Positions 10,561 to 55,670 of a stretch of DNA of 64,000 nt are shown piece after piece. How positions within the stretch are numbered: position 1 is the first letter of the stretch; each line of letters opens with the position of its first letter. The stretch is taken from the IMG/VR virus record IMGVR_UViG_3300044731_002337, positions 124,001 to 188,000 of that record; one strand, given 5' to 3'. The notes below the pieces were generated by a model. The model was not told where the DNA came from and made no database searches. It was given only the letters and a program-made list of their open reading frames with translations. The position numbers were made by a program, and so were the translations under genes.

Positions 10561-13500
10561 ATAATGATTCAAGTGTATTCAAATCACTAGCGAATATTGC
10601 AAGTTTCTTATCCAAGTGAAGTTTGTTCTTCGTATCAATGGGTGGGAGGCATAAATTGAGGAATTGAGTGAATGCGGAAGTGGATAAATGTGCAGATAAA
10701 CCACAGCCTTTGATGCGTGAATCTTGATAGAGGTTTTGGATGTTGGAACTACTAAAATCTTTGACGACCCAGTTCATGATGTAAAAGTGAATGTGATTGG
10801 GGAGGTATGGGGAGCCAAATTGGAGGTGAATAAGGTAGTCTTTTGTAGCTACGGCGAGAAGATGACATGCCTTGTAAGTATCTTCTATGGTTGTGATGGT
10901 ATCTGAATCATAGGTACGATTTTGTCCTTCATAAAGTGAAAATTGTTTAAGAGGGATTTGTAAGGTCTTTTCAAGTAGTGTCTTGTGTTGAGAAATGAGG
11001 TTGATGATTTTGGCCATGACAACATTTGAATCCATGCCTACGACCACAGTGAGTACATGAGGTACCGTGTGAATCGTTACATGTCGTTGAAAGTTTCGTA
11101 TAGCTGTTTGCTCATCATCATCTTTAATGGGTGCAGTCACATCAACTTTGGGCTTATTATTGGTGATGGATTTTTCTAAGCTTTCTAAACGTTTTTGGAG
11201 AGCAGTTTGACCATTTCGTTGCGCATCAGCTAGGTCCTTCACATTTAAAGGTTCTTTGAGACCAGAAGTTTGTAATAATCGTGTGCTACGCTGTAAACTT
11301 GAATCATAAAGTTCTTGTAGATGAATGATTCGATCACGCTGATTACGTAATTGAATGGATTCATCTTTGACTTGTGCATTTATTTTATCTAAACGATCAC
11401 GTGTAATTTGATTGATCAGTTCATCGTCTTCAGCTTCATTGTCAAGTTGGATAACGATGGCCGGTGCTTTGGTGTCTAGATTTTCTTTCACTTGGGCTGC
11501 AGGGGCAATATCTTGTGTCTTTTGTATGAGGTCAACTTGGGTTAGGAGTGAATTGTGTCGATCTTTGAGTTCATCAATATCCTTGGGTGGATCCTTGGCA
11601 TGGATGAGTTCCTTAATTTGGTCCTGTGATTGACGAAGTTCTTTGACAATTGGTTTTAACCCATTCTCGGTTGTCGCTTCAGGTGCCTTGAGTTTTGCTG
11701 CTAATTTATCTTGTTGATCTCGAATTTGTTTGGGTTGTGGTGGTAGCATGAGTGAGTTGATACGTTCACGGGCGTCATTATATTTCAATGTGCATGCATC
11801 GATGGTGGTTTGGATGATAGTCGACGCCTTGGTTGGGTTTAATTCAAGATCATGGATACCCAACTCTTTGGCGGATCGAAGTTGGAGTAGAGTTTGAGTG
11901 ACAATGTGTTTCATTTGTTCACGAGCCCATTGACGATCAGTCTCTTTTGGGAAACGTTTAGGTAATTGAGAATCCAATAATTTACCCGTATCTTTTAATT
12001 GTTTCTCAATGAGTACAACCGCATCATTCAATTTATTCACCAATTCAGGTTCCTTTTTATTAACTTGTGATTCCAGTTCTTTTATTTTATTCTGTAATTG
12101 ATCTGTTTCCTTTTCATTGGACAAGAAACGATCCTGATACTTACGAAAGATTTGTAATTGTTCACCTTCTAGGGCACGTTTATCCTTAATGGCTTGATAA
12201 TCTGCTACTAAAATATTGTGCTGTTTTTGAGAAGCGATAATACGTTCTTCCAATTGTTTATTGAGAGCCAAAGCTTTCTCTAATTGATCTTGCCTGGATT
12301 CAGCGACTTGTTGGCGTTGTTCTAAATTGAGTACATGTTGTGCTTGACTAGCTGATTTCTTGTGACATGAATCTAGTTCATCGCGTATGGCTAAAATCTC
12401 TTGGTTCATTTGTTCGACATTGTCTGCTGATTTACAATGTTTAATTTTTTGTTTGTATTCCTGAAGCTCGTTTTCTAATTGTGACCGTTCTGCAGCGAGC
12501 ACTTTGGCCGTTTCTAATTGTTTAGCGACCTCGGCTTGAAGTTGCTTCGTAACGGTTTCACAAGTCATGGACGCCTCTTTGAGTTTTTGATTATCGGTTG
12601 CCATGGTCTTGAGACGTTCCAGCTCCAAACTTTGATTCTCAAACATGGCCTTTTTCATGTTGTACTCACTTTCCAATAGTTGATATTTGGTAGGGTCAGA
12701 GTGTGATACAAGTCGTTTGGTGAGTGTCTCGAGTTCTCGTTTTGCCTCCTTAAGTTGTGATTCCATTTCCTTCTTTTCGTTGGTGAGCTGTACAATAACC
12801 TGTGTAATCTTGGTGGTCTCTGGTTTGGTGGATTTCACAGGTGAAGTTGGATCAGTCAGTTTGGCCCGTAATTCTTCTAGACGTGAAATAGTCTCTGTTA
12901 TGGGTACTAACATGGGTTCATCTGCACGAATCGCCTTGACCTGTTCTGCTAATGAATGAATATGTTTCAGAAAGGCTCCATTTTTAGCGACACATGAAGT
13001 ACTGATATCATGGGCGAATCCAACGCGTTGTTCTACTTGTTGGTATTGAGTGTTCAGTTCATTCCAGCGTTTCTCCCAATCTGCTTCTTTCGCTTTCCAC
13101 GCCTTTTCATTGGCATCTTTCTCAGCAAGGATTCGTTTGACAGAAGAGTCTTTATCATCGATAAGCTTGGCAATAGAGGATTCCTTATCCGTCAAGATTT
13201 TTCGCAAGGTAACTTCTTTATCCTCGATAAGTTTCTTAATGGTTGAATCTTTGGAAAGGTTGGAAGCTTGATATTCGTCAGTTAGCTTTTTTATGGTGGA
13301 TTCACGTTCTTTGTGCACTTGATGTAGTTCTTGAGTAAGCTGTTTGATGCGTTGTTCTAATGTATAATATTGGGATTTAGCGTTTGCCAAGTTTTGTTTA
13401 TCAATAGGGGCATCATTGGTTAGGGTGGTAATCAATTCTAAAAGTGATGTCGTATCCTCATAAATGGTTTGTAATGATTGATGTTGGTCAATATAGGCAT

Positions 13501-22779: not shown

Positions 22780-25700
22780 TTATGATGAGCAAGTATTGCA
22801 AACAACTGGTGTAGTAAAATTGAATTTGGTGGGCTTATCAATGGTGCGGAAATAGTAGCTGGCTGTTTTGAGGCCAAGATTCCAAGCAAAGCACCAGTAC
22901 TTGACAACTTCGATCGCCATATTCTCTCCACGTTTCATGTAGACATTGAGACTGATACTTTGGTCGACAAAACGAGAGCGATCGGCAGCCATGAGAGTAA
23001 TTTGGGCAAGTGGGATATCTACAATGGATCGGTAACGTTTCTTAATGTAATCCGGAATGGAAGCAATGTCGGTGAGTGATCCATTATTCGCTAGAATTTC
23101 ATCGTGAACAGGAATGGTAGATTTGGCATCAAATTTCCAAAGACCTGCTTCTTTGAGATCTCGTACCAGGTATTTGTTGAAGACATTGTATTCTCCAGTG
23201 TTCATGTATCGTTTGAAGCTACAGGCCAGGGCAGGTTCAAAGCATTCAAAGTTTCCTAAAATGATGGAAGTACCTGCAGTGGGCATATGAGCCATTAACA
23301 GGGAGTTGAGCATTTTGTTGGGTTTGGTCTTGATATCATGACGTAATTGGTCCCAGTTCCATCCGACACTTGTAGTAATATAGTCATGATGGGGTCTCTT
23401 TTCATAAATCTTTTGAGCCTGATTGTATTTGTCCCATAAATCTTGTTGTAAAATACCGGATTCAATGGGTGATCCAGCGATACTAGGATAATTGCCCCGT
23501 TCTTGAGCCAGGTCATGGGAACCTTTTAGGGCGGCATAATACATGGTTTCAGCGATTTGATAATTGAGACGTTGTGCTTCTTTTGAATCAAAGTCGAGTT
23601 TGAGGATCATAAACACATCTGCGAGTCCTTGAATGCCAATGCCAATAGGTCGATGTCTCATGTTGGAACGCCTTGTAGATTCCAGGGGATAAAAATTGAG
23701 GTCAATGACTTGGTTCATATGGTACACTAGATTATATACCACTTCATACAATTCTTGAAAATCGTATTGATCATCATGGATAAATGCCTTGAGGGAAACG
23801 GAGCACAAATTACAAACCGCGGTTTCTTCTGGTGAAGAGTATTCAATGATTTCTGTGCATAGATTAGATGATTTGATGGTACCGAGATTTTTTTGGTTGG
23901 ATTTGTGGTTACAGTGATCTTTGAATAGGATGTAAGGTCCGCCGGATTCGACTTGTGATTTGACAATGGCGAGGACAAACTCTCGAATGGGAACTTGTGC
24001 TTCATAGAGCCCTTGTGATTCATACTGGAGGTAGAGTTGTTCAAAAGCTTCACCATGCACGTCATCTAGCCCTCGACACTTTTGAGGGTTCATGAGGGAC
24101 CATACTTGTGGTTGATTGTGTTGATAATCTAGAATGATACGTTTCATGAACAAGTCGTTAACCCATAGAGCATAGAATAGGTCAGTAGCTGAAATGGTAT
24201 TGGCGGTCAAGGGGGATTTCAATTCTAAGAATTCCAAAACATCTGCATGCCATGGTTCTAGATAGACTGCAATGCTTCCTTTACGTTTACCACCACCATT
24301 ATGAGCGACCATACAGGATGTGACATAGGATGGGTCGGAGGACCTTTCCATTTCCAGGTCGAAGCAGTCATCAATGGTGGGTGGGCTGTGAATTACATTG
24401 TGAATAGGTAGACAGAGGTAGTTTTGGACTTGTATGCATGGTGTGAGGCGGCGACCATCTTGATCCTTGGGTGGCCATATCATACGGTATTCATTAGGAT
24501 AAATCTCCTCAATCAGAGCAAAAGAATATCCAAGTCGGTTAGCACAATATTCCAACGAATGCTTCTTTTGGGGGGAAACATTCTTTAACGTGGGACCTTG
24601 AAGTTCAAGACCTTCCATGAAATCGGCGACTTGGTCTAAGGGGGCGAATAGAATGGAGGCAGGAATGTCTTGTCGATTACATTGAAGTAGACCCATTAAT
24701 TGACCTTCAGGGATAATGATTTCCGTAGTGGAAAGACAGCGAACAGATACAATGGAAGATAACCAGGTTCGATCAATGTCTGGGCTTAGGAGGTGAAAGG
24801 TGATGAGTCCTTCTTGACATTGCCAGTTCATATCTGCGGTGATGAGGCCCAAGAGTTTTAAGAGATTTGAGTCGACATCAGGGATTCGTTTTTGGAGTTC
24901 AATGGTGTTGCAAATAGCGAGCCAGTGTTTGCGGGGATCGATTTCGTGGATGGTGGTGTAAAAGGGGAGAGCTCTTGATCCAAAGGTGTTGTCAATGACG
25001 AGAATAGGGTGAGAATCGGTGATGCCATGTGATACACGGTGATTAGGGAAAACTAAATGGTGGAATTGGAGTGATTTCTTGGTGGAAATAATTTTCTGAA
25101 TATGGTGAAAGTCTCCAAAACGGTTCATGACAAGATCATTGACTTGTAAGGATTGAATTTTGCGCCAACCAGTGGAAGTCATGACCCGGGTATCACCTTG
25201 AAAGCATTGGTCGACATAGCATGCTACAGAGTTATACACTTTGAGCATGGGTCCTACACCTCCAGTGACTCCATTAGTACCCTTGATATACGAATTCTTG
25301 CTACGGGTATTGTGGATGTTGATGCCAATGCCACCCGAGTGTTTGGAGATGATGCTACATTGCTTCCATCGATCAGCAATACCTTCAATGGAATCATCCC
25401 CAGCATATAAGAGAAAACATGAACTCATTTGGGGATGCATGGTTCCCGCGTTAAAGAGAGTAGGTGTAGCCATGATACATTTGCCCAGAGATAAATAATG
25501 ATACAACTGTATAGCTCTCTTGGTATTCATAGGGTTCAGGGCAATCGCTATTCTCATCCACATAAATTGTGGTTCCTCCAAAGGTACTGACACCATGATA
25601 TGCTGCCCATTATGTTCTACTCGCTTGTAAGTGTTGAGAAGGTATTTGCCATTAATAAGTTGGGTAATCGCCGCACAGTCAAATATAATGTTTCGATCAT

Positions 25701-26124
25701 GGTCAATTGTGGCTTCAATGAGGTCCATGTCAGGAATGTGTTCAAATGATTCGTGTAAGAGTGGTGACAACTCTCCCGTGCGTGGATTCACATTAGCGCG
25801 TGCTAGTCGAACATATTCTTTAAACGAATTTGGGGTGGATTTCTGGAGATTGGAGACTATAATTTGGCCGGCAAAGAGGTTATTGTCTGCAAAATAAGTA
25901 TCATGGGCGGCAACATTCGCAGATATAGTATCGAGTTCAGAGGTGGAAATGCCATCTGTAATTTGGTCAACTGTAGCACGGCATATTTTGAAAATTGACA
26001 CATCAATGGGACGTTTTAAGATACGGGTCATATGATCACGTATCGAGTTAAGACGTGCAGTAATTCGTTGAGGATCAATGGGTTCTTTTGTTCCATCACG
26101 GGTAGTAACACATCGAGGTTCCAT
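22780..26124 (-). CDS. nrdA: Ribonucleotide reductase large (alpha/R1) subunit, class Ia, containing an intein
   Basis: N-terminal ATP cone, ATPTLFNAG, MSSCFLL, GGIG, KGTNG, YVDQ/GGGKRKG, LEPWH, SNLCTEI, RPIGIGIQG, MPTAGTS, DQSIS, C-terminal CxxC. Confidence 0.97.
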   Translation of the reverse strand: MEPRCVTTRDGTKEPIDPQRITARLNSIRDHMTRILKRPIDVSIFKICRATVDQITDGISTSELDTISANVAAHDTYFADNNLFAGQIIVSNLQKSTPNSFKEYVRLARANVNPRTGELSPLLHESFEHIPDMDLIEATIDHDRNIIFDCAAITQLINGKYLLNTYKRVEHNGQHIMVSVPLEEPQFMWMRIAIALNPMNTKRAIQLYHYLSLGKCIMATPTLFNAGTMHPQMSSCFLLYAGDDSIEGIADRWKQCSIISKHSGGIGINIHNTRSKNSYIKGTNGVTGGVGPMLKVYNSVACYVDQCFQGDTRVMTSTGWRKIQSLQVNDLVMNRFGDFHHIQKIISTKKSLQFHHLVFPNHRVSHGITDSHPILVIDNTFGSRALPFYTTIHEIDPRKHWLAICNTIELQKRIPDVDSNLLKLLGLITADMNWQCQEGLITFHLLSPDIDRTWLSSIVSVRCLSTTEIIIPEGQLMGLLQCNRQDIPASILFAPLDQVADFMEGLELQGPTLKNVSPQKKHSLEYCANRLGYSFALIEEIYPNEYRMIWPPKDQDGRRLTPCIQVQNYLCLPIHNVIHSPPTIDDCFDLEMERSSDPSYVTSCMVAHNGGGKRKGSIAVYLEPWHADVLEFLELKSPLTANTISATDLFYALWVNDLFMKRIILDYQHNQPQVWSLMNPQKCRGLDDVHGEAFEQLYLQYESQGLYEAQVPIREFVLAIVKSQVESGGPYILFKDHCNHKSNQKNLGTIKSSNLCTEIIEYSSPEETAVCNLCSVSLKAFIHDDQYDFQELYEVVYNLVYHMNQVIDLNFYPLESTRRSNMRHRPIGIGIQGLADVFMILKLDFDSKEAQRLNYQIAETMYYAALKGSHDLAQERGNYPSIAGSPIESGILQQDLWDKYNQAQKIYEKRPHHDYITTSVGWNWDQLRHDIKTKPNKMLNSLLMAHMPTAGTSIILGNFECFEPALACSFKRYMNTGEYNVFNKYLVRDLKEAGLWKFDAKSTIPVHDEILANNGSLTDIASIPDYIKKRYRSIVDIPLAQITLMAADRSRFVDQSISLNVYMKRGENMAIEVVKYWCFAWNLGLKTASYYFRTIDKPTKFNFTTPVVCNTCSS
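24298..25206 (-). mobile_element. Intein (303 aa) with degenerate LAGLIDADG domain; C-extein +1 residue is Gly
   Basis: Starts CFQGDTRVMT, ends CFDLEM...CMVAHN; removal gives seamless YVDQ-GGGKRKGS; blocks LLGLITADM and FMEGLELQG are eroded LAGLIDADG motifs. Confidence 0.92.
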
Positions 26125-46490: not shown

Positions 46491-48245
46491 TTAGTAGGCA
46501 AAGTAGTTGAGGTTAAGTCCAGGGGTCATGGCGCGGTTATCAGCATTACCTTGGAAGTTCAGAAGGTTACTGGCGGCACTTCCAACACCTGAGCTGAGGA
46601 AGATGGCAGGTGCATTTTCGTAAGTGGTGAGGCCGACACATGATCCAACGGTATTGAGGAGGCCATCATTCATGTAGAGACTACTGTAGGCCACGGTTGT
46701 TTCACCAGTCACATAGGCGTACATGGGTAGGTTTTGGTAGCGTGTCTCAGTTTCATCACTGGCGACTTGGAATAAAACTCCCCATTCACCTGTAGTTTGA
46801 ACGGAGGCAGCGAAAGTACCATTACACTTGTATTTGAGGGTCTTGACATTGGCGCTAGGGAAGGAAATGACACCTGCCGTATTGAGCGAGTAGCAGTATT
46901 CCAACTTACCAGAAGTAGCATTTTGCCAAACTGCGACCAATTGGCTGGGTGAGACGTGCAACAGAGCAAAGTCAGAATAATTGGTAGCATCCACGGTAGT
47001 TGCTGGTGCCACATCAATCTTAGTGAAGGTAGGGGTCACTAAATCAGCAGAGGCGGATAGATAAGCGACACCAGTATTATTGGAAGTTCCAGCTACGGTA
47101 AAGCTAACCGCCAATCGTTTGGTTCCATCTGGATGAGTGAATGGGGTTAGGTTAAGGGATCGAGAGTTAGCAGCAAGAGCAGAGAGACCTCCAGAGGCAG
47201 AAGTGATGACATTGACTGGGGTACCAAATGTGAAGGTGGAAACATTGGGATCAGAAGAGCTCACAGTAGGAGTTCCTACGACAATCTTGACCTTGTACAC
47301 AGGATCTGAATTCACTACTAGATATCCAATGACAACCTTACCATCAAATTCGCACATGGCCAAAGTACCAGCCACAAAGCCAGTACCAGCATTCACTAAC
47401 GAGTCTGTGGTATCAATATTATTGAAAGCACAGTCAGCTTCAGCCGAAGACAAGGCGCTGTGGAGACGTCTAAACTTAATTTGTGTAGCACTGGCATTAG
47501 GATCAACCCAGGCTAATGCTGCATGCTCAGCAAGGGAACAAACCGCGAAATCGAAAGGGTAACCATACTTGGTGGCACTGCTAACCGTCCTGTTATATTG
47601 GGTAATCATTTGGGGTAGAATCCACGAGTGAGTTAAAGGGGAATAGAAAGTGTACATAAGACTGGAATTTCTAGTAGTGGACAAAGTTAAGTCGCCACCA
47701 GCAGTATAGTCGGTGTAATACATGCAGCATAATCCATTTACCTTGTCAGAAGCATTCACGGTAGCAGTAGAGGAAATGGATAAGGTGACAGGTGCAGCCT
47801 TGATTTGATTTCGGTGATGACGGTGATCAGCGCGGGAGGTAGAGATAGTAAAGGTATCAGTTACACCACTCGCAGACAAGACTTTTGTTTGTTTACCACC
47901 AGCTTCCCAATCCGGTTGTAATTGGACCACAGCCTTGGTACTGGTTAATTCTCGAATGGAAGTAGGTCGAACATATCCATCTAGAGTGCTTCGTGATTCT
48001 AAGAGAAAGAAAGGGTTGGCCGTATGAGGCTTAGTAAAAGTTAATTCGTAATCATTGGGTAATGACAAGGTGTCAGGTGTGGGAACATGTTTAGACACAG
48101 CTTCTTGCTCTCTCACTGGGGGAGGAACGGAGCCAAGCTTATTAGCCTTGTTGTTGTAGTTGTGAATACCTAATCCCATACCAGCGACACCACAAGCCAC
48201 TGCACAAAGGAGTACAAACCAAAGAACCATGTGAGTTACTTCCAT
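46491..48245 (-). CDS. Putative virion surface or fibre protein with N-terminal TM and beta-rich body
   Basis: Start MEVTHMVLWFVLLCAVACGVAGMGLGI at 48245; A/S/T/G-rich beta-strand sequence. Confidence 0.65.
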   Translation of the reverse strand: MEVTHMVLWFVLLCAVACGVAGMGLGIHNYNNKANKLGSVPPPVREQEAVSKHVPTPDTLSLPNDYELTFTKPHTANPFFLLESRSTLDGYVRPTSIRELTSTKAVVQLQPDWEAGGKQTKVLSASGVTDTFTISTSRADHRHHRNQIKAAPVTLSISSTATVNASDKVNGLCCMYYTDYTAGGDLTLSTTRNSSLMYTFYSPLTHSWILPQMITQYNRTVSSATKYGYPFDFAVCSLAEHAALAWVDPNASATQIKFRRLHSALSSAEADCAFNNIDTTDSLVNAGTGFVAGTLAMCEFDGKVVIGYLVVNSDPVYKVKIVVGTPTVSSSDPNVSTFTFGTPVNVITSASGGLSALAANSRSLNLTPFTHPDGTKRLAVSFTVAGTSNNTGVAYLSASADLVTPTFTKIDVAPATTVDATNYSDFALLHVSPSQLVAVWQNATSGKLEYCYSLNTAGVISFPSANVKTLKYKCNGTFAASVQTTGEWGVLFQVASDETETRYQNLPMYAYVTGETTVAYSSLYMNDGLLNTVGSCVGLTTYENAPAIFLSSGVGSAASNLLNFQGNADNRAMTPGLNLNYFAY

Positions 48246-48343
48246 TTTTTTTCGGTAAGTCTTCTTTTTGTTTTTTTTTATGCAGTGTGTAAAAAAATTT
48301 TTCAAGGACTCAAGAACATGTAGATAAAAAAAAAAGATTATGT

Positions 48344-48790
48344 TTATTGTCCATTTACCCATTCTAAAACTCCTTGGCTTGAACCATCGCCATCAGGGCG
48401 TCGTACACGCGTTGATAATTTAAGATTGCGCTTTTCCCCTCTCTTTTTCTCTTCTCGATAACGTTCGACCATTTGTTCTGCGGACAATTGTTCATTTCTT
48501 CGCCATGAATCGATAAAGGAGGAAAATAAACGTACTAAATCTTCTTCTTTTAATGTGGGTTCAGATTTGTGTTTATCTACCGTAATCCATGGACCAGCAC
48601 CTTGACCGGAGATATCGATACACGACTTATTAAAACCTCTCAACATGACTTCAATAATTTCCTTTTCATACTTGTCAATAGTTGTCTTTTTTTCTTTGAC
48701 ACCACTATTAATGGATTCAATTTCAGACTTACCTTGTCGGTATGCAGAGTACTTTTCTACTAGTATCTGTTTCGCTTGTTCTGAATTCAT
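48344..48790 (-). CDS. Hypothetical coiled-coil protein (DUF5760-like)
   Basis: KEKKTTIDKYEKEIIEVM pattern; TAAATG start. Confidence 0.55.
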   Translation of the reverse strand: MNSEQAKQILVEKYSAYRQGKSEIESINSGVKEKKTTIDKYEKEIIEVMLRGFNKSCIDISGQGAGPWITVDKHKSEPTLKEEDLVRLFSSFIDSWRRNEQLSAEQMVERYREEKKRGEKRNLKLSTRVRRPDGDGSSQGVLEWVNGQ

Positions 48791-48871
48791 TTATATATAC
48801 TTTTTTTTTTCTAATATTTGTGACTGGATCTTTTTTTATTTCGCGTTTGTTCCGATCTGGAGGGGACATAG

Positions 48872-49798
48872 TTGGAAGGAAACAATTTGATCATGCATCA
48901 TTTATGGAAGCAGTTAATGATGAGCAAGGTATATATGACGGATGTGTTTAAAGTTTGGAAGTTTGAGATGTATATCAAGGATCGTCGACCAATTACATCA
49001 GTTCATTTGGCAAAGAATTCGCAAGGTGCCTGGTGTGTGTTCAAGACGATTAATGTGGGCCGTTGTATGTCCATGTTTGTTGAAGTCTTGGTGTTACGTG
49101 TCATGCAAAATACGCCGGGAATAGTACGTATGGAAGAGTGGGCATACAATGTGGCACATGATGTAGTGATTATTCAATTTCCTCGAATGGTGATGGATTT
49201 GCAGCAGTTCATGTATAAGTGGCGTCATCATGCAAGGGTACGTCGAAAATATATGTTGGCCAATGTAGCGGGTCTATTGGAGACATTGGTGGAAGTGCAT
49301 CGCCATGGTATTGTTCATCGAGATCTCAAGCCCGCCAACATTTTATTGGATGACAAGGAATATTGGTTTTTGCATGATTTTGGAAATTCGATATGGGAGC
49401 ATAAGCCGGGACAAGAGTATGCTACAGACATGGCAAATACAGTAACACACCGTCCTCCGGAATGTATGGGTAAAGATCGAATGGTAGCCTATGATCAAAA
49501 GATTGACGTTTGGGCTTTGGGAATCATATGTTATGAATTGTGGTTTGGATCATTACCTATTGAAAGCTACGAGTACAATGTGATTCGTGATTTCTATCTA
49601 CTAAATCCTGTGGAAACATGGGCAACTTTATGGTCCTTACCTGAACCATGGATGAACTTTTTTTACAAGTGTCTCCAATCCAACCCTCAACATCGATTTT
49701 CAGCATATCAACTCATGGCATTACCTTTATTCAAGGAGGTCTTACCTGGTAATGCCAAGAATTCCCGATCTCCTATCGCCATTCCATTACATACCTGA
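48872..49798 (+). CDS. Ser/Thr protein kinase
   Basis: VFK, HRDLKPANIL, DFG, THRPPE, DVWALG; no canonical Gly-rich loop. Confidence 0.92.
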   Translation: MEGNNLIMHHLWKQLMMSKVYMTDVFKVWKFEMYIKDRRPITSVHLAKNSQGAWCVFKTINVGRCMSMFVEVLVLRVMQNTPGIVRMEEWAYNVAHDVVIIQFPRMVMDLQQFMYKWRHHARVRRKYMLANVAGLLETLVEVHRHGIVHRDLKPANILLDDKEYWFLHDFGNSIWEHKPGQEYATDMANTVTHRPPECMGKDRMVAYDQKIDVWALGIICYELWFGSLPIESYEYNVIRDFYLLNPVETWATLWSLPEPWMNFFYKCLQSNPQHRFSAYQLMALPLFKEVLPGNAKNSRSPIAIPLHT

Positions 49799-49804
49799 CG
49801 AGTG

Positions 49805-51783
49805 ATGGATAACAATATATGTCCTGTTTGTTCAATTCAATGTGCCAATGTCGAGTCATTTCGTGACCATGTAGCCCATGAACATGAAGACTATAAACAT
49901 TTTGCATGTGAATTGCATATTGCGGAACAACCTTGCAAGGCTAGATACAAGTATAAGAAGGATCTACTCATTCATCAAAAGAAAGTGATTCATGATCAAG
50001 TGAGGCAATATGTATCTCCAGCGTATCATCAACTAAGATTAAGGACAAAACATGCTACGTCATGGGTGCATTGGACCTCATTGTATGTTCAATATAAATC
50101 TCCCAGTGATCCGGTATTGTCGAATGAGCAAAAAATGTCAGTGGAGCAGTTGATGAGTAGGCTGAAGCAGGAGGAGATGTGGGTGGAAGAAGCAGTTTAT
50201 GATTCATGGCAATTTGAAGAAATGGTGGAGCAATTGGAGAATTATTGGAATCAGGCCAAGACAATTGGAAATCAATTACGTCTATTATTTTGGCATGTCC
50301 TGTATAAGTTCTGTGTGGATCCTTTACTTTCGGATTCGGTGGTTCATTTTTTACACAAGAGGTCCAGTAAATATTTTATCAAGGCGACCAAAATTGTGCA
50401 AGGATCATTAGGTGTACAAATCATGGACCCTTATCAAATGGTGGAACTACGTTATCGAATCTTGGTAGAACTTCAAAAGCAACAGCAAGAAGTATTGGAT
50501 CCATTTATTCTTCAATACTATCGTGAGAGATCATCTAAGATGCCATTACTCGAGTTTGGATTGAAATTAAGGTGTTGGATAGATTTGATGATTCGGTTTA
50601 CCAATATTCCTATGAGAATTCAAGCGACCAAGGAACTTCATTTAGGGTATCCGTTTCGAAAGACGGATGTGGCCGAACATCATGTGGCAAGATTATTATA
50701 TGAGAATGGTGTCTTTACCCGTTTATTCATGTTTGATAAAGTGGGCAAAACAGGTAAGCATTAATGATTTTTTTGTTTGTTTGTTTGTTGTTAACTATGC
50801 ACAAAAAAGGTGCTCATCGTCCAATTCGATGTCCTTTACCAGGATTTATAACTCCTTACTTATTATTCTACATTAAGTATTGTCGACCAACGGAAAAGGA
50901 GAATTCCTTGGTATTTCTCAATGCGACGGGCAGTGCATGGAAACAAGCATCAAGGGATATTAAGATGTATATGCAAGATGTATTGGACATTCAAGTGAAT
51001 GCATTAGATCCTTCAGGTCGTTTTGTTCATGGGTCAAGGTCTATCATGTTGGCGAATTATGCATTGCGTGTACGATTTGATCCATTGAAGTTACAACAAT
51101 TTGCTACCTTGATGAGACATTCGTTTGCGACGATGAATTCTTATTACTTGTTATGGACGGATTGGGCGACAGCGAGACTTGCCATGTCCGACTTTAATCA
51201 AGCGTTTGGTTTATCTGCCCCCGAAGAAAAACCATGTGATTTTTCAGCCTTTGATGTCCATTTTTCTTTCACTCAGGGTATAATGGAAGAAAAAGAAGTA
51301 TCGCCACAGATTGAAACATTATCATGTAAACCTGCAGTAAATTCTCGTTCATTCGAAGAGGTAACATCGTCATTCGAAGAGGTAACTTCTGGTTCATTTG
51401 AAGGGGTAACATCGTCATGCAAACCTTTGGTAACTTCTGGTTCATTTGAAGGGGTAACATCGTCATGCAAACCTTTGGTAACTTCTGGTTCATTCGAAGA
51501 GGTAACATTGTCATGCAAACCTGCGGAAACATCGTCATGCAAACCTGCGGTACAAGAGCAAAAGAGTGGAAATGGTTGTGACAAGTGTGGTAAAGTAATG
51601 ACGATTTATGGTCCTTATGGGAAGAGGAAGCATGTGAAGCAATATGGATGTTATTGGTATGAATGTAAGGATTGTGAGTTGAAGAAATGGATACCATTAG
51701 GATATATGACGGAATATAGTCATTCACGAAAATCCAAGAATCACGATAAGATTATGGCATTTATTAAAGCTTCTTTGAAATAA
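49805..51783 (+). CDS. C2H2 zinc finger plus tyrosine-recombinase-like protein; exons join(49805..50753,50810..51783)
   Basis: N-terminal CPVC...HVAHEH and C...HQKKVIH; TNIPMR, DK, HGSR, MRH and SYY give the R-K-H-R-H-Y set; two track ORFs join in frame (1923 nt). Confidence 0.7.
50754..50809 (+). other. Spliceosomal-type intron (56 nt, phase 1)
   Basis: CAG|GTAAGC...TTAAC branch-like...AAAAG|GTG; the spliced product DKVGKTGAHRPIRCPL aligns with the intronless paralog DDKNMNSHLPIIVPV. Confidence 0.85.
51314..51550 (+). repeat. Tandem array of 48-bp GGTAAC-family units and sub-units inside the CDS
   Basis: VTSGSFEGVTSSCKPL repeats with degenerate flanking copies. Confidence 0.9.
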
Positions 51784-51792
51784 TAGATCTTG

Positions 51793-52263
51793 TTACTTGA
51801 CAAGGTACATGTTGGCTTCGGTTCCAGCGTGTAAAAGTTGCCAATTAGGGTGAACGGGTTATTGTGGTTTCACTGGAATTTGACCTAGTAGACCAACAAT
51901 AACCCATTCAGGTCGTTGAGATCTGGGGACATACACTTTAGAGGCATCAAATGTAGGGTTCAAGCGATCTCGTGTAATGGTATTGGTCACAGGATTGGTG
52001 GGAATGATTTTGCTCTTGAGTTCTGCGGTAAGGATGGTTACGCGAGCATTGGTGACCAAGGAGTTGAAGGATGTATTTTCGGGTGTAACAACTACGTCAT
52101 AGTTAGGAATGGTTGGGTTGGTTGTAGTTTCAAATTGATGAAATGCTCCGGCTTCATCACGCCATGATACAACTTGAATTTGTTCGGTCAAGGTATTACC
52201 AAATGGCCCTTTAATATATTTACCTTTCCATTTATTCCATTGCGAATTACCTACAAGAGCTGC
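51793..52263 (-). pseudogene. Peptidase_G2/IMC (fibre autocleavage chaperone) C-terminal fragment with an in-frame stop
   Basis: ALVGNSQWNKWKGKYIKGPFG...YVPRSQRPEWVIVGLLGQIPVKPQ*PVHPNWQLLHAGTEANMYLVK*; no in-frame ATG upstream. Confidence 0.7.
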
Positions 52264-52363
52264 AAAAAAAAAGTATCATACTACCACCAATCATTTTGAT
52301 GTTTGTGGCGTGTTATTCCTTGTCGTGATGCATGGTGGGTTTTTTTTTGTAGAGATGGATAGT

Positions 52364-53404
52364 TTATCTGTCCCGTTTAAGGACTAGACTTTTGAGTTGT
52401 TGAACATTGAGGTCTATTGCCGGGTTAAATTGGATGCGATGATTAGGGAAGCAAGCGGTGAGTGATTCTTGCAGAGTAGTATCCGTTTTAGGTGGTAATT
52501 CTGGGAAGTGTTGAAATAAAGGGTGAGAGTCGAATAAGAGTGTACATCGAGATAATGTTTCGATGGGGATGACATGAGTGGTTACTGTGGTACCCCATTG
52601 AAAGTTACCTTGTCGAATAGCTTGACCCATATCTTCCCAACTTTGTAAAGTGGATCGATTGGAAGGGTATAAGAGTTTTACATTTTCATGTTGATTATAG
52701 GATTGGTGATCGTAGAGTGAAGTAGATACTTGACCCCATTTTGTACCTGTAGCATATCGTTCTTGTTGCATTTGGTGTGTATGTCGCATTACTAAACTCA
52801 CATCATGCATAATGGATTGATTAAAATTGGTAACGACTCCAATGGTATCTGCTATAATATGGCGCATGTTATGGAGTAAACGTGGTCGAATAATTCGTTC
52901 GAGTTTCAAGTGTGTGGCTATAAACGTCTTGACATCTGAGGCGATACGTGTCCAAGGTGTGGCGCCATGAAATAGGTAAGGTCCAGGGGCTCGTAAATGG
53001 AGAATATAATATGCTAAATAATAGGATAATGTATCTCCAACAGGTACAATGATAGGTAGATGACTATTCATATTTTTATCATCGTACCAAATGCGATGAA
53101 AGCGTTTATTACGAAATATAAGTTTGCTTGTATAGGGTACATGATGTAGGGATCCTTGTTCTTCCCAAATCAAATGTTCAGAGGCTTGACTACGATGAGG
53201 TACATTAGTCACACGTAATGCTAGGTCAATCCAACATTTGAAAAACATTTCTTTATTGGGTATACCATCTATTCGGCTTGGATGATTCGTCATAAACAGT
53301 TCCATATCAGGTTGCCATTTTGCAAGTTCATGTACAATGACATTACGAAGAATATAACGATCAAAAGCAGTCAAATCTTCTACAGCAGGCATTTGTAAGT
53401 TCAT
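52364..53404 (-). CDS. Tyrosine-recombinase-like protein, paralog of 49805..51783
   Basis: TNVPHR, DDK, LHNMRH, VMRHT, QERY. Confidence 0.7.
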   Translation of the reverse strand: MNLQMPAVEDLTAFDRYILRNVIVHELAKWQPDMELFMTNHPSRIDGIPNKEMFFKCWIDLALRVTNVPHRSQASEHLIWEEQGSLHHVPYTSKLIFRNKRFHRIWYDDKNMNSHLPIIVPVGDTLSYYLAYYILHLRAPGPYLFHGATPWTRIASDVKTFIATHLKLERIIRPRLLHNMRHIIADTIGVVTNFNQSIMHDVSLVMRHTHQMQQERYATGTKWGQVSTSLYDHQSYNQHENVKLLYPSNRSTLQSWEDMGQAIRQGNFQWGTTVTTHVIPIETLSRCTLLFDSHPLFQHFPELPPKTDTTLQESLTACFPNHRIQFNPAIDLNVQQLKSLVLKRDR

Positions 53405-53447
53405 CTTGTTATTATTTTTTCTTCTTCAACAGGATATGGAAAAAAAA

Positions 53448-53951
53448 TTATAGATAACGTTTTTCGGTTATGCGCCACGGTCGATGTAATGTATCCAAGG
53501 TTTTACATTCCTCGAATAAAGATAATATGTAATTATCCTTGGTCTTGTCATGTCCTTGATTCATAACAATGAGTACTACGGATTCCATAAGACTATACAC
53601 TCGAAAACAATCAATATCCAATTGATCTTTTCTGTCTTCTGTAAAATGCAAGTAAAACCAATTCATCATTTGCTCATCGACTGTTAGATCAAGGGGTTTA
53701 TCCAAATTATGAGTAGTCATAAATGTCTTGAGCCTTTCTCGTACATAAGCTCCCATTGATCCTTCTCTTGTGGAAGGGATAGTTGTGGATTGGCTATACG
53801 TCTTGCAACATGGCATTTTAAGTTTATTCCATAACGTTAGCATAGCTATATTATGTCTTGTGCAATACTCCATAGCTTGGCGAAAATGAGTAGCCCATTC
53901 ATCAGTACTCATGTTGTACTCTTTTGTTTTATCTACTCGAATCTTACTCAT
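53448..53951 (-). CDS. Hypothetical protein
   Basis: 167 aa ORF. Confidence 0.6.
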   Translation of the reverse strand: MSKIRVDKTKEYNMSTDEWATHFRQAMEYCTRHNIAMLTLWNKLKMPCCKTYSQSTTIPSTREGSMGAYVRERLKTFMTTHNLDKPLDLTVDEQMMNWFYLHFTEDRKDQLDIDCFRVYSLMESVVLIVMNQGHDKTKDNYILSLFEECKTLDTLHRPWRITEKRYL

Positions 53952-54107
53952 CTACTAACTAATAAAAAAAAATAGAAAAAAATGTGTTTATATCCTTGAT
54001 CTCATTTGGGAAATGTCGTGTAATAAAAATGGCTAGTCCCATTACTCGAGTTAACTTGTCTACTGTTCCCTTTCCTGAAGAAGTATTTCCATCAGGGGGA
54101 TTCGGCT

Positions 54108-54497
54108 GTGTTTGTAGGTGCATGGATGTGTGTGGAAGATGCCAATGCATTTGTAACCAAAGTGAATAATACTGACAAGGCTCGAGAGTATCCATCAGCA
54201 CGTATGTATATTCTCAATGAGCATATGAATCAAGAGGGTATTGAAAAGTTGGCTTTGGTGTATTTCAATTGTGTATTGTCATTATTTTGTTATATGATGG
54301 AATTGCATGCAGGTTCAACACAACATTTGAGGGTTGATGGAATGGATGGATGGTTTCATTTGTATCGTAAATATGTGGAAGAATGGTTATCTTATGAAGG
54401 TGAACCAAGACAATGGTTGAAAGAAATGAATGTTAATGCAAACTGGTCTGTATGGGCATATAATGAACATCTAACCACGGATGATAATGGTCATTGA
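54108..54497 (+). CDS. Hypothetical protein, start uncertain
   Basis: 129 aa ORF overlapping a short upstream ORF in another frame. Confidence 0.5.
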   Translation: MFVGAWMCVEDANAFVTKVNNTDKAREYPSARMYILNEHMNQEGIEKLALVYFNCVLSLFCYMMELHAGSTQHLRVDGMDGWFHLYRKYVEEWLSYEGEPRQWLKEMNVNANWSVWAYNEHLTTDDNGH

Positions 54498-54573
54498 CAT
54501 ACCCGTACAATTGAATTCGTTGAACTCGATCATTAACTTTAGATGATAAGAATAAAAATAAAAAGATTGTGTA

Positions 54574-55254
54574 ATGACGTCTTTGGTTTTGTTGCAGGCA
54601 AAGTTTTTGTTTCAGAAATTCAAGTTGTATGATATGAATAGTGTACAGAGAGCTTTATGGTATTATAAGGATACAATGAAGGGGGAAAGTAAAATGACAA
54701 CTCGAAAGTTTTTACATGCGATGTATAAATTGATACCTCATCATTTGCAGTGGGTAGGAGAGGCGAGTAAAATAGATAGTATAGTACATCGATTTATGAA
54801 TTATCAGAACCGTTTGCCTCGATGTGGGGTAATTTTATTATGTCAGAATAAGGTATTGGTGTTGAGGTCATTGTATGGGAGGAATTTGATGTTTCCAATG
54901 GGGAAGCAATTGAGGAATGAATCAAGTCACAAGTGTGCTGAAAGGGAATGTGTAGAAGAAACTGGATTGCAAGTTTATTTGGGGGAACATAGTGAACGGG
55001 TTGAGTTAAAGATGAATGGTCATACACCACGATACTTATATATTTACAAATTAGAATGTAATATTAATTTATTAAGGATTTCACCGCAGACACATTATGA
55101 AGTAAGTAATTATCGTTGGGTAGATTGGGAATGGTTTAATGAAGACAAACCATTTCGTGGATTTACAGGTCAAGGTTGGAAGTGGCTTATTCACTATCTT
55201 CATCATCGAATATATCCTCCCCTTTTGCTAACGCATGTTCCACCAGTACTGTGA
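54574..55254 (+). CDS. Nudix hydrolase, Dcp2-like mRNA decapping enzyme
   Basis: YQNRLPRCGVILL (Dcp2-like) and Nudix box FPMGKQ...CAERECVEETGL. Confidence 0.85.
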   Translation: MTSLVLLQAKFLFQKFKLYDMNSVQRALWYYKDTMKGESKMTTRKFLHAMYKLIPHHLQWVGEASKIDSIVHRFMNYQNRLPRCGVILLCQNKVLVLRSLYGRNLMFPMGKQLRNESSHKCAERECVEETGLQVYLGEHSERVELKMNGHTPRYLYIYKLECNINLLRISPQTHYEVSNYRWVDWEWFNEDKPFRGFTGQGWKWLIHYLHHRIYPPLLLTHVPPVL

Positions 55255-55409
55255 GTCTAGCACAATATTCATTCATCAAACGTAATTGATTGGTTACTGT
55301 ATCCATTTGTTCAATGATACTATCAAGACGGGTTAAAACATCTGTGGGTGGAGTGGACATGATTGAGTTTTCTTTTTTGCGAATTTGAAAAAAAAAAGAA
55401 TGGATAGGT

Positions 55410-55670
55410 GTGAGTATACGAATAAGAAGTAGAAAAAAAAAAGCAAGGAAGAGAAATTTTTGGATGAAAGAGCAAAGGTGTTGGTATTGGGTATCAGTAT
55501 TAATTCAGATAACAATAGTCATTTGGTTTATTATTATATTCTTCCGTATGAAACATTTTGAAGCAATGGCATTAACATGTAAGAATTTGTGTCATGAAAA
55601 CTTTGAGCGATTACAAAAAATAAATGGGAAAGTGGGAAACTCTATGGCACCAAACATTACCTCAACGTGA
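55410..55670 (+). CDS. Small single-TM protein
   Basis: WYWVSVLIQITIVIWFIIIFF; the true start is probably the internal ATG (MKEQR). Confidence 0.45.
   Translation: MSIRIRSRKKKARKRNFWMKEQRCWYWVSVLIQITIVIWFIIIFFRMKHFEAMALTCKNLCHENFERLQKINGKVGNSMAPNITST

What the first reader, a model, noticed from the sequence alone, without database searches (positions are those of the whole stretch)
49805..53404. Convergent pair of tyrosine-recombinase-like genes with intact catalytic sets, flanking a fibre-chaperone pseudogene
Both proteins show R (PMR or PHR), K, HxxR (HGSR or HNMR), H (MRH) and a terminal Tyr with tyrosine-recombinase spacing. One adds N-terminal C2H2 fingers and a C-terminal CxxC ribbon. 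Inference: these may be a XerC/D-like heteropair for genome resolution, or an integrase or invertase. An integration function would be relevant if the locus is endogenous.
Basis: partly seen in the sequence, partly recalled or inferred. Interest (0 to 1): 0.6.

Follow-up and report, generated by a model that had tools for sequence, protein, structure and literature searches.

The report
Paired tyrosine recombinases in a giant virus
A giant virus from lake water carries two facing genes for DNA cut-and-rejoin enzymes of the tyrosine-recombinase type, from a family that standard databases do not recognise; one gene is interrupted by a short cell-type intron.

Summary
The window is part of a 295-kb giant-virus record (RNA polymerase subunits, A32-like ATPase). 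Gene B (52364-53404, minus strand, 346 aa) and gene A (49805-51783, plus strand) are paralogs.

Pfam, NCBIfam and PDB sequence searches find nothing. An AlphaFold model of B built on a 98-sequence alignment (pLDDT 81) matches only tyrosine recombinases, type IB topoisomerases and protelomerases in its top 28 structural hits (Cre Z 11.8, XerH 11.7).

R, D-K, R and Y are invariant or nearly so in 98 family members. The H of HxxR is kept in 85 of 98 and the later H in 83 of 98.

Gene A is not one open frame. A 56-nt GT..AG intron (50754-50809) splits it. Two relatives have an intron at the same codon (46 and 39 nt), and an intronless relative reads straight through.

Gene A (640 codons) has two N-terminal C2H2 fingers and a C-terminal four-Cys ribbon. 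This architecture is widespread, only in unnamed metagenomic giant-virus contigs, and often occurs without a B gene. The A/B pair is syntenic in four to six related viruses.

The DNA between the two genes varies among relatives. Here it holds a truncated phage-type appendage-chaperone fragment.

The biological role is not settled: integration, genome resolution or something else. No recombination site or junction was found.

The parts
49805..50753 (+). Gene A, exon 1 (316 full codons plus the first base of a Gly codon). It holds two N-terminal zinc fingers, a roughly 200-aa linker region and the first half of the catalytic domain, with R271 (50615-50617) and K312 (50738-50740).
   Evidence: The R and the D-K motif are invariant in the family.
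49820..49885 (+). First C2H2 zinc finger of gene A (C-x2-C-x12-H-x4-H).
   Evidence: Pfam hits are weak (Zn_SUZ12 E 0.0017, zf-C2H2_4 E 0.065). C4, C7, H20 and H25 are invariant in 25 full-length relatives, which also carry a second finger.
50754..50809 (+). Spliceosomal-type intron, 56 nt, phase 1 inside a Gly codon. It starts GTAAGC, has a T-rich tract and a TTAAC branch-like motif, and ends AAG.
   Evidence: Removing it restores the frame and the colinearity with paralog B. L004 (46 nt) and L005 (39 nt) have GT..AG introns at the same codon with unrelated sequence. Ortholog L008 has no intron there and reads ...FDKVGKTGAHRPIRCP... without a break. No RNA data were available.
50810..51783 (+). 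Gene A, exon 2 (stop included). It holds the second half of the catalytic domain with H390 (51028-51030), R393 (51037-51039), H420 (51118-51120) and Y429 (51145-51147), then a repeat linker and a Cys ribbon.
51315..51552 (+). In-frame tandem repeat (24/48-nt units, about 4.6 copies) in the linker of gene A. Copies of the same unit are dispersed over the viral genome.
   Evidence: Contig depth is about 10-fold there and assemblies break there. The linker differs in relatives.
51577..51675 (+). C-terminal Cys ribbon of gene A (C-x2-C ... C-x4-C-x2-C).
   Evidence: Four Cys are invariant in 25 relatives.
51859..52272 (-). Truncated Peptidase_G2 / intramolecular-chaperone domain fragment. It is an open frame of 137 codons with no ATG, in the variable slot between the two recombinase genes.
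   Evidence: Pfam E 2.9e-15, profile positions 93-179 of 228. It is single-copy in the genome. It is 32% identical to the Synechococcus phage S-SM2 pre-neck appendage protein, with a short match to phi29 gp12. It is absent from L004 and L008, where A and B lie 18 and 8 nt apart.
52364..53404 (-). Gene B, 346 aa, an intact single ORF. The catalytic domain is residues about 7-237 (52694-53386), followed by a conserved C-terminal region of about 110 aa. Catalytic residues: R71 (53192-53194), K110 (53075-53077), H178 (52871-52873), R181 (52862-52864), H208 (52781-52783), Y217 (52754-52756).

Best explanation
Genes A and B encode two paralogous, probably active enzymes of the tyrosine-recombinase (DNA breaking-rejoining) fold. 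They belong to a sequence family that Pfam and PDB sequence searches do not see.

Shown: the fold of B; the ordered, conserved catalytic set R...D-K...H-x-x-R...H...Y in both proteins; the paralogy; the intron in A; the conserved synteny of the pair in related lake giant viruses; and the wide stand-alone occurrence of the A type.

Inferred: each protein cleaves DNA through a covalent 3'-phosphotyrosine link (Y429 in A, Y217 in B) and rejoins it, as site-specific recombinases do. A would be the ancestral recombinase of these viruses and would find its site with its two C2H2 fingers and its C-terminal Cys ribbon. B has no N-terminal clamp domain and carries its own C-terminal domain. It would be a clade-specific second recombinase or partner subunit.

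The biological reaction is not established. I rank integration into and excision from host chromatin first, resolution of replication products second, and other rearrangements of the viral genome third. The intron implies that the gene A transcript meets the host spliceosome, so the virus would have a nuclear phase.
For: Fold. The AlphaFold2 model of B on a 98-sequence alignment has pLDDT 81 and pTM 0.79. An exhaustive structural search gives only tyrosine recombinases, type IB topoisomerases and protelomerases in ranks 1-28: Cre Z 11.8 over 183 residues at 3.1 A, XerH 11.7, XerA 11.6, bacterial topoisomerase IB 11.1, variola topoisomerase 10.6. Next come the recombinase-derived Ndc10 (5.8) and QRICH1 (4.8), and unrelated folds score 4.6 or less. 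Foldseek against PDB ranks the same families first at weak E-values. BFVD gives giant-virus proteins, including a 'Tyr recombinase domain' protein of Heterosigma akashiwo virus (E 3e-4). ESM Atlas shape hits include Phage_integrase clusters.

Residues. R71, K110, R181 and Y217 are 98/98, D109 is 97/98, H178 is 85/98 and H208 is 83/98. hhalign to XerD aligns K110 with K172, H178/R181 with H244/R247, H208 with H270 and Y217 with Y279. Those XerD positions are invariant in the Xer/Fim alignment.

Paralogy.

Synteny. The order Nudix - B - A - kinase, between the RNA polymerase subunits, is kept in L004, L005 and L008/L009.

Architecture. The A type architecture is invariant in 25 relatives, and the A type stands alone in L025, L026 and the P0280 contig.

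Role hints. One B ortholog carries a chromodomain (E 1.7e-9).
Against: No sequence-level membership in Phage_integrase: 0 of 98 members hit it. The hhalign probability is only 27-30%.

No recombination site, inverted-repeat core or recombination junction was found near the genes or in contigs from four lake samples.

Activity is untested, and clustering of the residues in 3D could not be measured here.

B lacks the N-terminal core-binding domain that typical recombinases use.

Fold scores do not separate recombinase from type IB topoisomerase (Z 11.8 versus 11.1).
Confidence: 0.78

Rival explanations
1. Integrase role. A, with or without B, inserts a circular form of the viral genome into host chromatin and excises it again, as phaeovirus tyrosine recombinases are proposed to do.
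For: The chromodomain on B ortholog P0002 is the kind of module that targets integrases to chromatin. The intron implies nuclear processing. In phaeoviruses a tyrosine recombinase is a universal gene and insertions occur at CC dinucleotides (PMC13236599). The nearest viral structural relatives include proteins of virophages and polinton-like viruses, which integrate.
Against: There is no host flank on the 295-kb record and no host-virus junction in contigs from four samples. No att-like repeat was found. Only one of six B orthologs has the chromodomain. The virus encodes its own RNA polymerase.
Confidence: 0.35
2. Xer-like resolution. A and B form a heterotetramer that resolves genome dimers or concatemers at a single site after replication.
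For: Two intact paralogs sit side by side and are co-conserved in at least four viruses. Both keep all catalytic residues. The genome shows a strong replichore-like GC skew that flips at about 282.5 kb, as expected for ordered replication with a defined terminus or origin. No A22-type resolvase or Pfam-recognisable topoisomerase lies in the 295 kb held, but the record is only about 55% complete and the A22 control search rang nowhere.
Against: The A type occurs without B in more distant viruses, so B is not generally required. A and B do not share an architecture, unlike XerC and XerD. In the tree B is a separate old clade, not a recent twin of A. No dif-like site was found.
Confidence: 0.2
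3. Topoisomerase or telomere-resolvase role. One or both proteins relax supercoils like poxvirus type IB topoisomerase, or make hairpin ends like protelomerases, rather than recombine.
For: Type IB topoisomerases score almost as high as recombinases (Z 11.1 and 10.6). B is about the size of poxvirus topoisomerase. No Pfam Topoisom_I or topoisomerase II gene lies in the 295 kb held.
Against: The family has H-x-x-R (85/98), whereas type IB topoisomerases have K-x-x-R; only 4/98 members have K. The R-to-H-to-Y spacing of 27 and 9 residues is that of recombinases (established knowledge of vaccinia topoisomerase R223, H265, Y274). Protelomerases score lower (Z 6.3-6.6). The zinc fingers suggest sequence-specific binding. 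The record is incomplete, so topoisomerases may lie elsewhere.
Confidence: 0.1
4. Selfish-element reading. The pair is a Crypton-like transposon or other mobile element lodged in the virus, of no use to it.
For: Tyrosine recombinases drive Cryptons, DIRS elements and Starships in eukaryotes (PMC11244446 and PMC13236599 reference lists). The DNA between the genes varies among relatives.
Against: The position between the same flanking genes is fixed across viruses whose B proteins are only 36-60% identical. There are no terminal repeats. The genome holds a single active copy of each gene plus one degenerate paralog elsewhere. Catalytic residues are under strong purifying conservation.
Confidence: 0.05

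Closest known systems
Bacterial, archaeal and phage tyrosine recombinases (Cre, XerC/D, XerH, XerA, lambda Int; Pfam Phage_integrase PF00589)
   Same: Same catalytic-domain fold (Z 11.6-11.8). Same ordered catalytic set with recombinase-type H-x-x-R and the same spacing.
   Different: No Pfam or HMM match. There is no SAM-like core-binding domain: A has C2H2 fingers and a Cys ribbon instead, and B starts directly with the catalytic domain. The genes are eukaryotic-virus genes, one of them with an intron.
Phaeovirus integrase (EsV-1, FsV-158 and Ectocarpus endogenous viruses)
   Same: A giant-virus tyrosine recombinase that is conserved across the group, modelled against XerH, with intact catalytic residues (PMC13236599). 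A 620-aa Feldmannia virus protein is a weak structural hit (E 0.022).
   Different: Phaeoviruses lack their own RNA polymerase (my knowledge). There the gene sits near the end of the integrated genome and att sites are known. Here no site or junction is known, and there are two paralogs.
XerC/XerD and FimB/FimE (adjacent or cooperating recombinase paralogs)
   Same: Two paralogous recombinases, both with complete active sites, kept together.
   Different: XerC and XerD share one architecture and are both needed. Here the architectures differ and A occurs alone in other viruses.
Poxvirus and bacterial type IB topoisomerases
   Same: Same superfamily fold (Z 10.6-11.1). B is of similar size.
   Different: The family has H-x-x-R rather than K-x-x-R, shorter spacing before the last His, and no Topoisom_I match.
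Spliceosomal introns of giant viruses (pandoraviruses, some chloroviruses, mirusviruses)
   Same: Short GT..AG introns with variable positions even among close relatives (PMC12768974).
   Different: Here the intron lies in an NCLDV-like virus that has its own RNA polymerase and an A32-like ATPase. It is seen in a recombinase gene, and three positions are used in different relatives.

Membership tests
Tyrosine recombinase / type IB topoisomerase superfamily (DNA breaking-rejoining fold) | Catalytic-domain fold | tested here: met
   The model of B has pLDDT 81. Ranks 1-28 of an exhaustive structural search are all members of this superfamily, Z 5.8-11.8, covering residues 7-237.
Tyrosine recombinase / type IB topoisomerase superfamily (DNA breaking-rejoining fold) | Ordered catalytic residues R, K, H/K-x-x-R, H/W, Y, conserved | tested here: met
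   Both A and B carry them. Counts in 98 members: 98/98, 98/98, 85/98, 98/98, 83/98 and 98/98. They align to XerD K172, H244, R247, H270 and Y279.
Tyrosine recombinase / type IB topoisomerase superfamily (DNA breaking-rejoining fold) | Catalytic residues cluster in one pocket in 3D | not testable with these tools
   Model coordinates cannot be read out here. Only ranges and scores are returned.
Tyrosine recombinase / type IB topoisomerase superfamily (DNA breaking-rejoining fold) | Covalent 3'-phosphotyrosyl-DNA intermediate | not testable with these tools
   This needs a biochemical assay.
Pfam Phage_integrase (PF00589) | Score above the family's gathering threshold | tested here: not met
   No hit for A or B, for any of 98 members at E up to 1, or in the six-frame genome search. 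hhalign to Xer/Fim profiles gives only 27-30% probability.
XerC/XerD-type heteropair | Two paralogs kept together, both catalytically intact | tested here: met
XerC/XerD-type heteropair | Both partners always present, with the same architecture | tested here: not met
   The A type stands alone in L025, L026 and the P0280 contig. A has zinc modules and B does not.
XerC/XerD-type heteropair | A dif-like core site (two inverted arms around a short spacer) | tested here: inconclusive
   None was found within 48000-55500. The rest of the genome was not scanned, and half of it is missing.
Type IB topoisomerase | K-x-x-R in place of H-x-x-R, and a Topoisom_I profile match | tested here: not met
   The position is H in 85/98 and K in 4/98 members. 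PF01028 is absent.
Protelomerase (TelK, TelA, ResT) | Closest structural similarity to telomere resolvases | tested here: not met
   Z is 6.3-6.6 and 4.5, well below the recombinases.
Phaeovirus-type viral integrase | Host-virus junctions and att sites next to the gene | tested here: inconclusive
   No junctions appear in contigs of four runs and no flanking repeats were found. Contigs cannot show rare forms.
Spliceosomal intron (for 50754-50809) | GT..AG ends; removal restores the frame and the homology | tested here: met
   Exons of 949 and 971 nt give 640 codons.
Spliceosomal intron (for 50754-50809) | Same position in relatives with diverged intron sequence, and an intronless ortholog that reads through | tested here: met
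   L004 has 46 nt and L005 has 39 nt at the same Gly codon. L008 is continuous there.
Spliceosomal intron (for 50754-50809) | Spliced RNA observed | not testable with these tools
   No RNA run holds the stretch.
Peptidase_G2 / intramolecular chaperone domain (for 51859-52272) | Complete domain attached to a fibre or spike protein | tested here: not met
   Only profile positions 93-179 of 228 are covered. There is no ATG and no upstream fibre part.

The most novel reading that the evidence does not exclude
The convergent recombinase pair marks a gene-capture slot. The DNA between the 3' ends of A and B differs among otherwise syntenic relatives. It holds nothing, a phage-type appendage-chaperone fragment, or two, three, or four or more genes. 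One whole gene is gained or lost exactly after B's stop codon between two viruses that are 80-85% identical. If the recombinases insert or remove this cargo, this would be an integron-like platform in a giant virus.
Probability: 0.07. Interest if true: 0.85.

Novelty: new variant of a known kind. Interest (0 to 1): 0.55.

Why it matters
Giant viruses are increasingly found integrated in protist and algal genomes, yet the enzymes responsible are known only for phaeoviruses.

This family is widespread: 165 clusters at 50% identity, all metagenomic, none named, invisible to Pfam. It has the recombinase fold with zinc DNA-binding modules. It is therefore a concrete candidate for the integrase or genome-resolution enzyme of a whole group of freshwater giant viruses.

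The conserved intron adds evidence that a virus with its own RNA polymerase still passes transcripts through the host spliceosome. The family could also yield new site-specific recombinases as tools.

Tried and rejected
- Pfam and NCBIfam scans of A, B and 98 relatives gave no recombinase hit.
- Profile searches of PDB sequences with 7- and 98-sequence alignments gave nothing.
- The first AlphaFold run, on the 7-sequence alignment, was useless (pLDDT 34).
- Foldseek against PDB gave only weak E-values (0.2 or worse), although the right families came first.
- The word search with E. coli XerD returned only near-identical XerD proteins, so the Xer profile stayed shallow. hhalign stayed at 27-30% probability. 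Cre alone gave no alignment.
- Searching the records behind L004, L005 and L008, and using a locus as the centre for relatives, was not possible.
- The repeat scan around the pair found no lox-, dif- or att-like site and no terminal repeats.
- Laying contigs of four lake metagenomes gave no excision, inversion or intron-less DNA form. The only joint lies in the dispersed repeat. No RNA run was available.
- Junction sequences of the gene gain or loss between L024 and L005 show only A-rich leaders and no repeated core.
- Lineage placement failed. There is no Capsid_NCLDV or VLTF3 hit, and Rpb2 is equally distant from all solved polymerases.
- Reading the frame break in A as a sequencing frameshift or a real pseudogene was rejected. 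The break coincides with GT..AG, it recurs with other lengths in two relatives, and the source contig covers it with no differences.
- The joined (spliced) protein of gene A was deliberately not built, searched or folded. Its exons were handled separately by reference. For the same reason no complex prediction of A with B was sent.
Full report
**Setting**

The window is bases 124001-188000 of a 294,773-base virus record that CheckV rates about 55% complete. It encodes:
- RNA polymerase subunits Rpb1 and Rpb2
- a ribonucleotide reductase with a Hint (intein) hit
- an SNF2 helicase
- a Ser/Thr kinase
- a Dcp2-like Nudix protein

An A32-like packaging ATPase lies elsewhere on the record. The same DNA is held by lake-water metagenomes from seven studies. 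I treat it as an uncultivated NCLDV-like giant virus of an unknown freshwater host. I found no sign of a host flank or of an endogenous state.

**The observation**

Gene B is one intact ORF on the minus strand, 52364-53404, 346 aa. Gene A lies on the plus strand and appears as two ORFs, 49802-50764 and 50764-51783.

A search of the record with B finds both ORFs in order. B residues 14-110 match the end of the first ORF. B residues 113-233 match the start of the second (BLASTP E 1e-8 and 5e-8). So A and B are paralogs, and A's catalytic domain is split between two frames.

**The intron**

At the break the DNA reads ...ACA G|GTAAGC...(T-rich tract)...TTAAC...AAAAAG|GT GCT.... Removing 50754-50809 (56 nt) rebuilds a Gly codon. 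It joins ...FDKVGKT-G-AHRPIRCP..., which aligns without a gap to B's ...DDKNMNSHLPIIVP.... The two exons, 949 and 971 nt, give exactly 640 codons.

Comparison with relatives supports this:
- L004 and L005 break at the same Gly codon, with GT..AG segments of 46 and 39 nt. Their sequences are unrelated, while both flanks are conserved.
- The more distant L008 has no break there and reads FDKVGKTGAHRPIRCP straight through.
- L008 carries two other GT..AG introns further down the same gene, 90 and 50 nt.
- All five segments have a TAAC- or TAAT-like motif 10-18 nt before the AG (read directly).
- Many database ORFs of the family start or stop in the middle of the domain, as split genes would.

The source contig covers the intron with no differences, and no intron-less DNA form was seen. 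There is no RNA evidence, because no RNA run holds the stretch.

The exons were always handled separately by reference.

**What the proteins are**

Pfam, NCBIfam and PDB sequence profiles give nothing. The word search found six close relatives of B. A model built on them failed (pLDDT 34).

A profile search of 1.84 billion representatives, using B-type sequences plus the separate exon pieces of A, found 165 proteins. On a 98-sequence domain alignment, AlphaFold2 gave pLDDT 81 and pTM 0.79 for B.

The exhaustive structural comparison put only tyrosine recombinases, type IB topoisomerases and protelomerases in ranks 1-28:

| Match | Z | Detail |
|---|---|---|
| Cre | 11.8 | 183 residues, 3.1 A, model residues 7-236 |
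| XerH | 11.7 | |
| XerA | 11.6 | |
| Deinococcus topoisomerase IB | 11.1 | |
| Variola topoisomerase | 10.6 | |
| Ndc10 (recombinase-derived) | 5.8 | |
| QRICH1 (recombinase-derived) | 4.8 | |
| Unrelated folds | 4.6 or less | |

Foldseek and the ESM Atlas agree at weaker scores. The viral structure library returns giant-virus proteins first. These include two Hyperionvirus proteins and a 'Tyr recombinase domain' protein of Heterosigma akashiwo virus.

**Catalytic residues**

Conservation in 98 members:

| Residue in B | Count |
|---|---|
| R71 | 98/98 |
| D109 | 97/98 |
| K110 | 98/98 |
| H178 | 85/98 (K in 4) |
| R181 | 98/98 |
| H208 | 83/98 (N in 10) |
| Y217 | 98/98 |

Gene A has the same set: R271, K312, H390, R393, H420 and Y429, with the same 27- and 9-residue spacings at the end.

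hhalign to E. coli XerD and to a small Xer/Fim profile is weak (probability 27-30%). Even so, it pairs K110 with K172, H178/R181 with H244/R247, H208 with H270 and Y217 with Y279. These are the known XerD active-site residues, and they are invariant in the reference alignment.

The H-x-x-R form and the short spacing are those of recombinases rather than type IB topoisomerases. I could not measure whether the residues cluster in the model.

**Family structure**

A tree of the 98 domains gives three groups.

- **A type** (68 rows, support 96). About 600 aa, with two C2H2 fingers at the very N terminus, a linker of about 200 aa, the catalytic domain and a four-Cys ribbon. All of these are invariant in 25 full-length members.
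- **B type** (7 rows, support 99). The catalytic domain starts at the N terminus, and a conserved C-terminal region of about 110 aa follows. One member adds a chromodomain.
- **Third type.** The domain is near the N terminus of proteins of 650-990 aa.

B is not nested within A, so the duplication is old. No member has a name in NCBI or UniRef. One JGI record calls its protein an 'uncharacterized C2H2 Zn-finger protein'.

**Genomic context**

The order Rpb2 ... Nudix - B - A - kinase ... Rpb1 is kept in L004, L005 and L008/L009. Their B proteins are 36-60% identical to the window's. L024 and the P0003 contig keep the Nudix - B part.

In more distant giant-virus-like contigs the A type stands alone and has no intron. 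Those contigs carry ankyrin proteins, rhodopsins, a DNA ligase and an AEP-type primase.

The record also holds a third, degenerate paralog outside the window, in which the catalytic Arg is replaced.

**The slot between the genes**

The DNA between the two stop codons differs among relatives:

| Virus | Content of the slot |
|---|---|
| L004 | 18 nt |
| L008 | 8 nt |
| This window | 580 nt |
| P0003 contig | two genes |
| L005 | three genes |
| L024 | four or more genes |

L024 differs from L005 (80-85% identical) by one whole 241-aa gene placed exactly after B's stop. The junctions show no repeated core.

In the window the slot holds a 137-codon open frame without an ATG (51859-52272, minus strand). 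It matches Peptidase_G2/IMC at E 2.9e-15 but only over profile positions 93-179 of 228. It is single-copy. Its nearest phage matches are the C-terminal parts of pre-neck appendage proteins. 'Truncated fragment, probably a pseudogene' is a fair description.

On the minus strand a T-run followed by CAG lies directly upstream of this frame, and a short ATG lies 25 nt before it. I do not claim an intron there.

**Mechanism and role**

The enzyme-level reading is well supported for B: two DNA breaking-rejoining enzymes that use a tyrosine nucleophile. It carries over to A by homology.

The role is open.

- *For integration:* the chromodomain on one B ortholog, the nuclear processing implied by the introns, the phaeovirus precedent (PMC13236599), and structural nearness to recombinases of virophages and polinton-like viruses.
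- *For genome resolution:* the co-conserved pair, its fixed position among core genes, and the strong strand asymmetry of the whole record, which flips at about 282.5 kb.
- *Against an obligate Xer-like pair:* A occurs alone elsewhere, and the two architectures differ.
- *Unresolved:* no site and no junction were found.

**Novelty**

Tyrosine recombinases are known in giant viruses, virophages and eukaryotic transposons, and spliceosomal introns are known in some giant viruses and in mirusviruses (PMC12768974). The new elements here are:
- a large unannotated family that Pfam does not detect, with a zinc-finger, recombinase and ribbon architecture
- a conserved two-paralog arrangement around a variable slot
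- comparative proof of shifting intron positions in this gene

I rate it a new variant of a known kind, of moderate interest.

Noticed in passing
Whole record G000 (window = 124001-188000); flip at G000 position about 282,536: The plus strand has a GC skew of about +0.2 over 282 kb, under genes of both orientations (+0.24 and +0.16). It then flips to -0.1 to -0.35 for the last 12 kb. This looks like a replication-related strand asymmetry with one switch point, which is unusual for a giant virus.
   Followed up: partly
G000:C1:103963-105453 (+), = L015:1048-2538, outside the window: A third member of the same recombinase family (496 aa, profile E 1.5e-9). The catalytic Arg is replaced (VPWS) and no H-x-x-R is recognisable, so it is probably an inactive paralog.
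   Followed up: partly
window 51315-51552: The in-frame 24/48-nt tandem repeat in gene A belongs to a repeat family dispersed over at least 12 other places of the record. Metagenome assemblies break there, and contig depth is about 10-fold.
   Followed up: partly
L008:12052-12101 and 12317-12406 (minus strand): In a more distant relative, gene A lacks the window's intron but has two other GT..AG introns (50 and 90 nt) further downstream. Intron positions therefore turn over within this one gene.
   Followed up: yes
window 51784-52363; L004:11363-11380; L008:11564-11571; L005:11225-13871; L024:2348-5649: The DNA between the two convergent recombinase genes ranges from 8 nt to four or more genes in otherwise syntenic relatives. 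One 241-aa gene is gained or lost exactly after B's stop codon between two close relatives.
   Followed up: partly
window 52262-52300 (minus strand): A T-run followed by CAG sits directly upstream of the chaperone-fragment frame. A short ATG-led stretch ending in G|GT lies 25 nt before it. This could be an acceptor-like site or chance; 25 nt would be very short for an intron.
   Followed up: no
L008:1-1890 (Rpb1 gene of a relative): The relative's Rpb1 product (1828 aa) carries an mRNA_cap_enzyme Pfam hit in addition to the Rpb1 domains. This would be a polymerase-capping enzyme fusion.
   Followed up: no
window 22780-26124 (-): The ribonucleotide reductase large subunit (1114 aa) has a weak Hint-domain hit at residues 307-354 and a split barrel match, which suggests an intein.
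   Followed up: no
Whole record G000: The 295 kb held gives no Pfam hit for the NCLDV major capsid protein, VLTF3, topoisomerase IB, topoisomerase II or A22 resolvase. The record is about 55% complete, and some control searches rang nowhere, so this does not show absence.
   Followed up: partly
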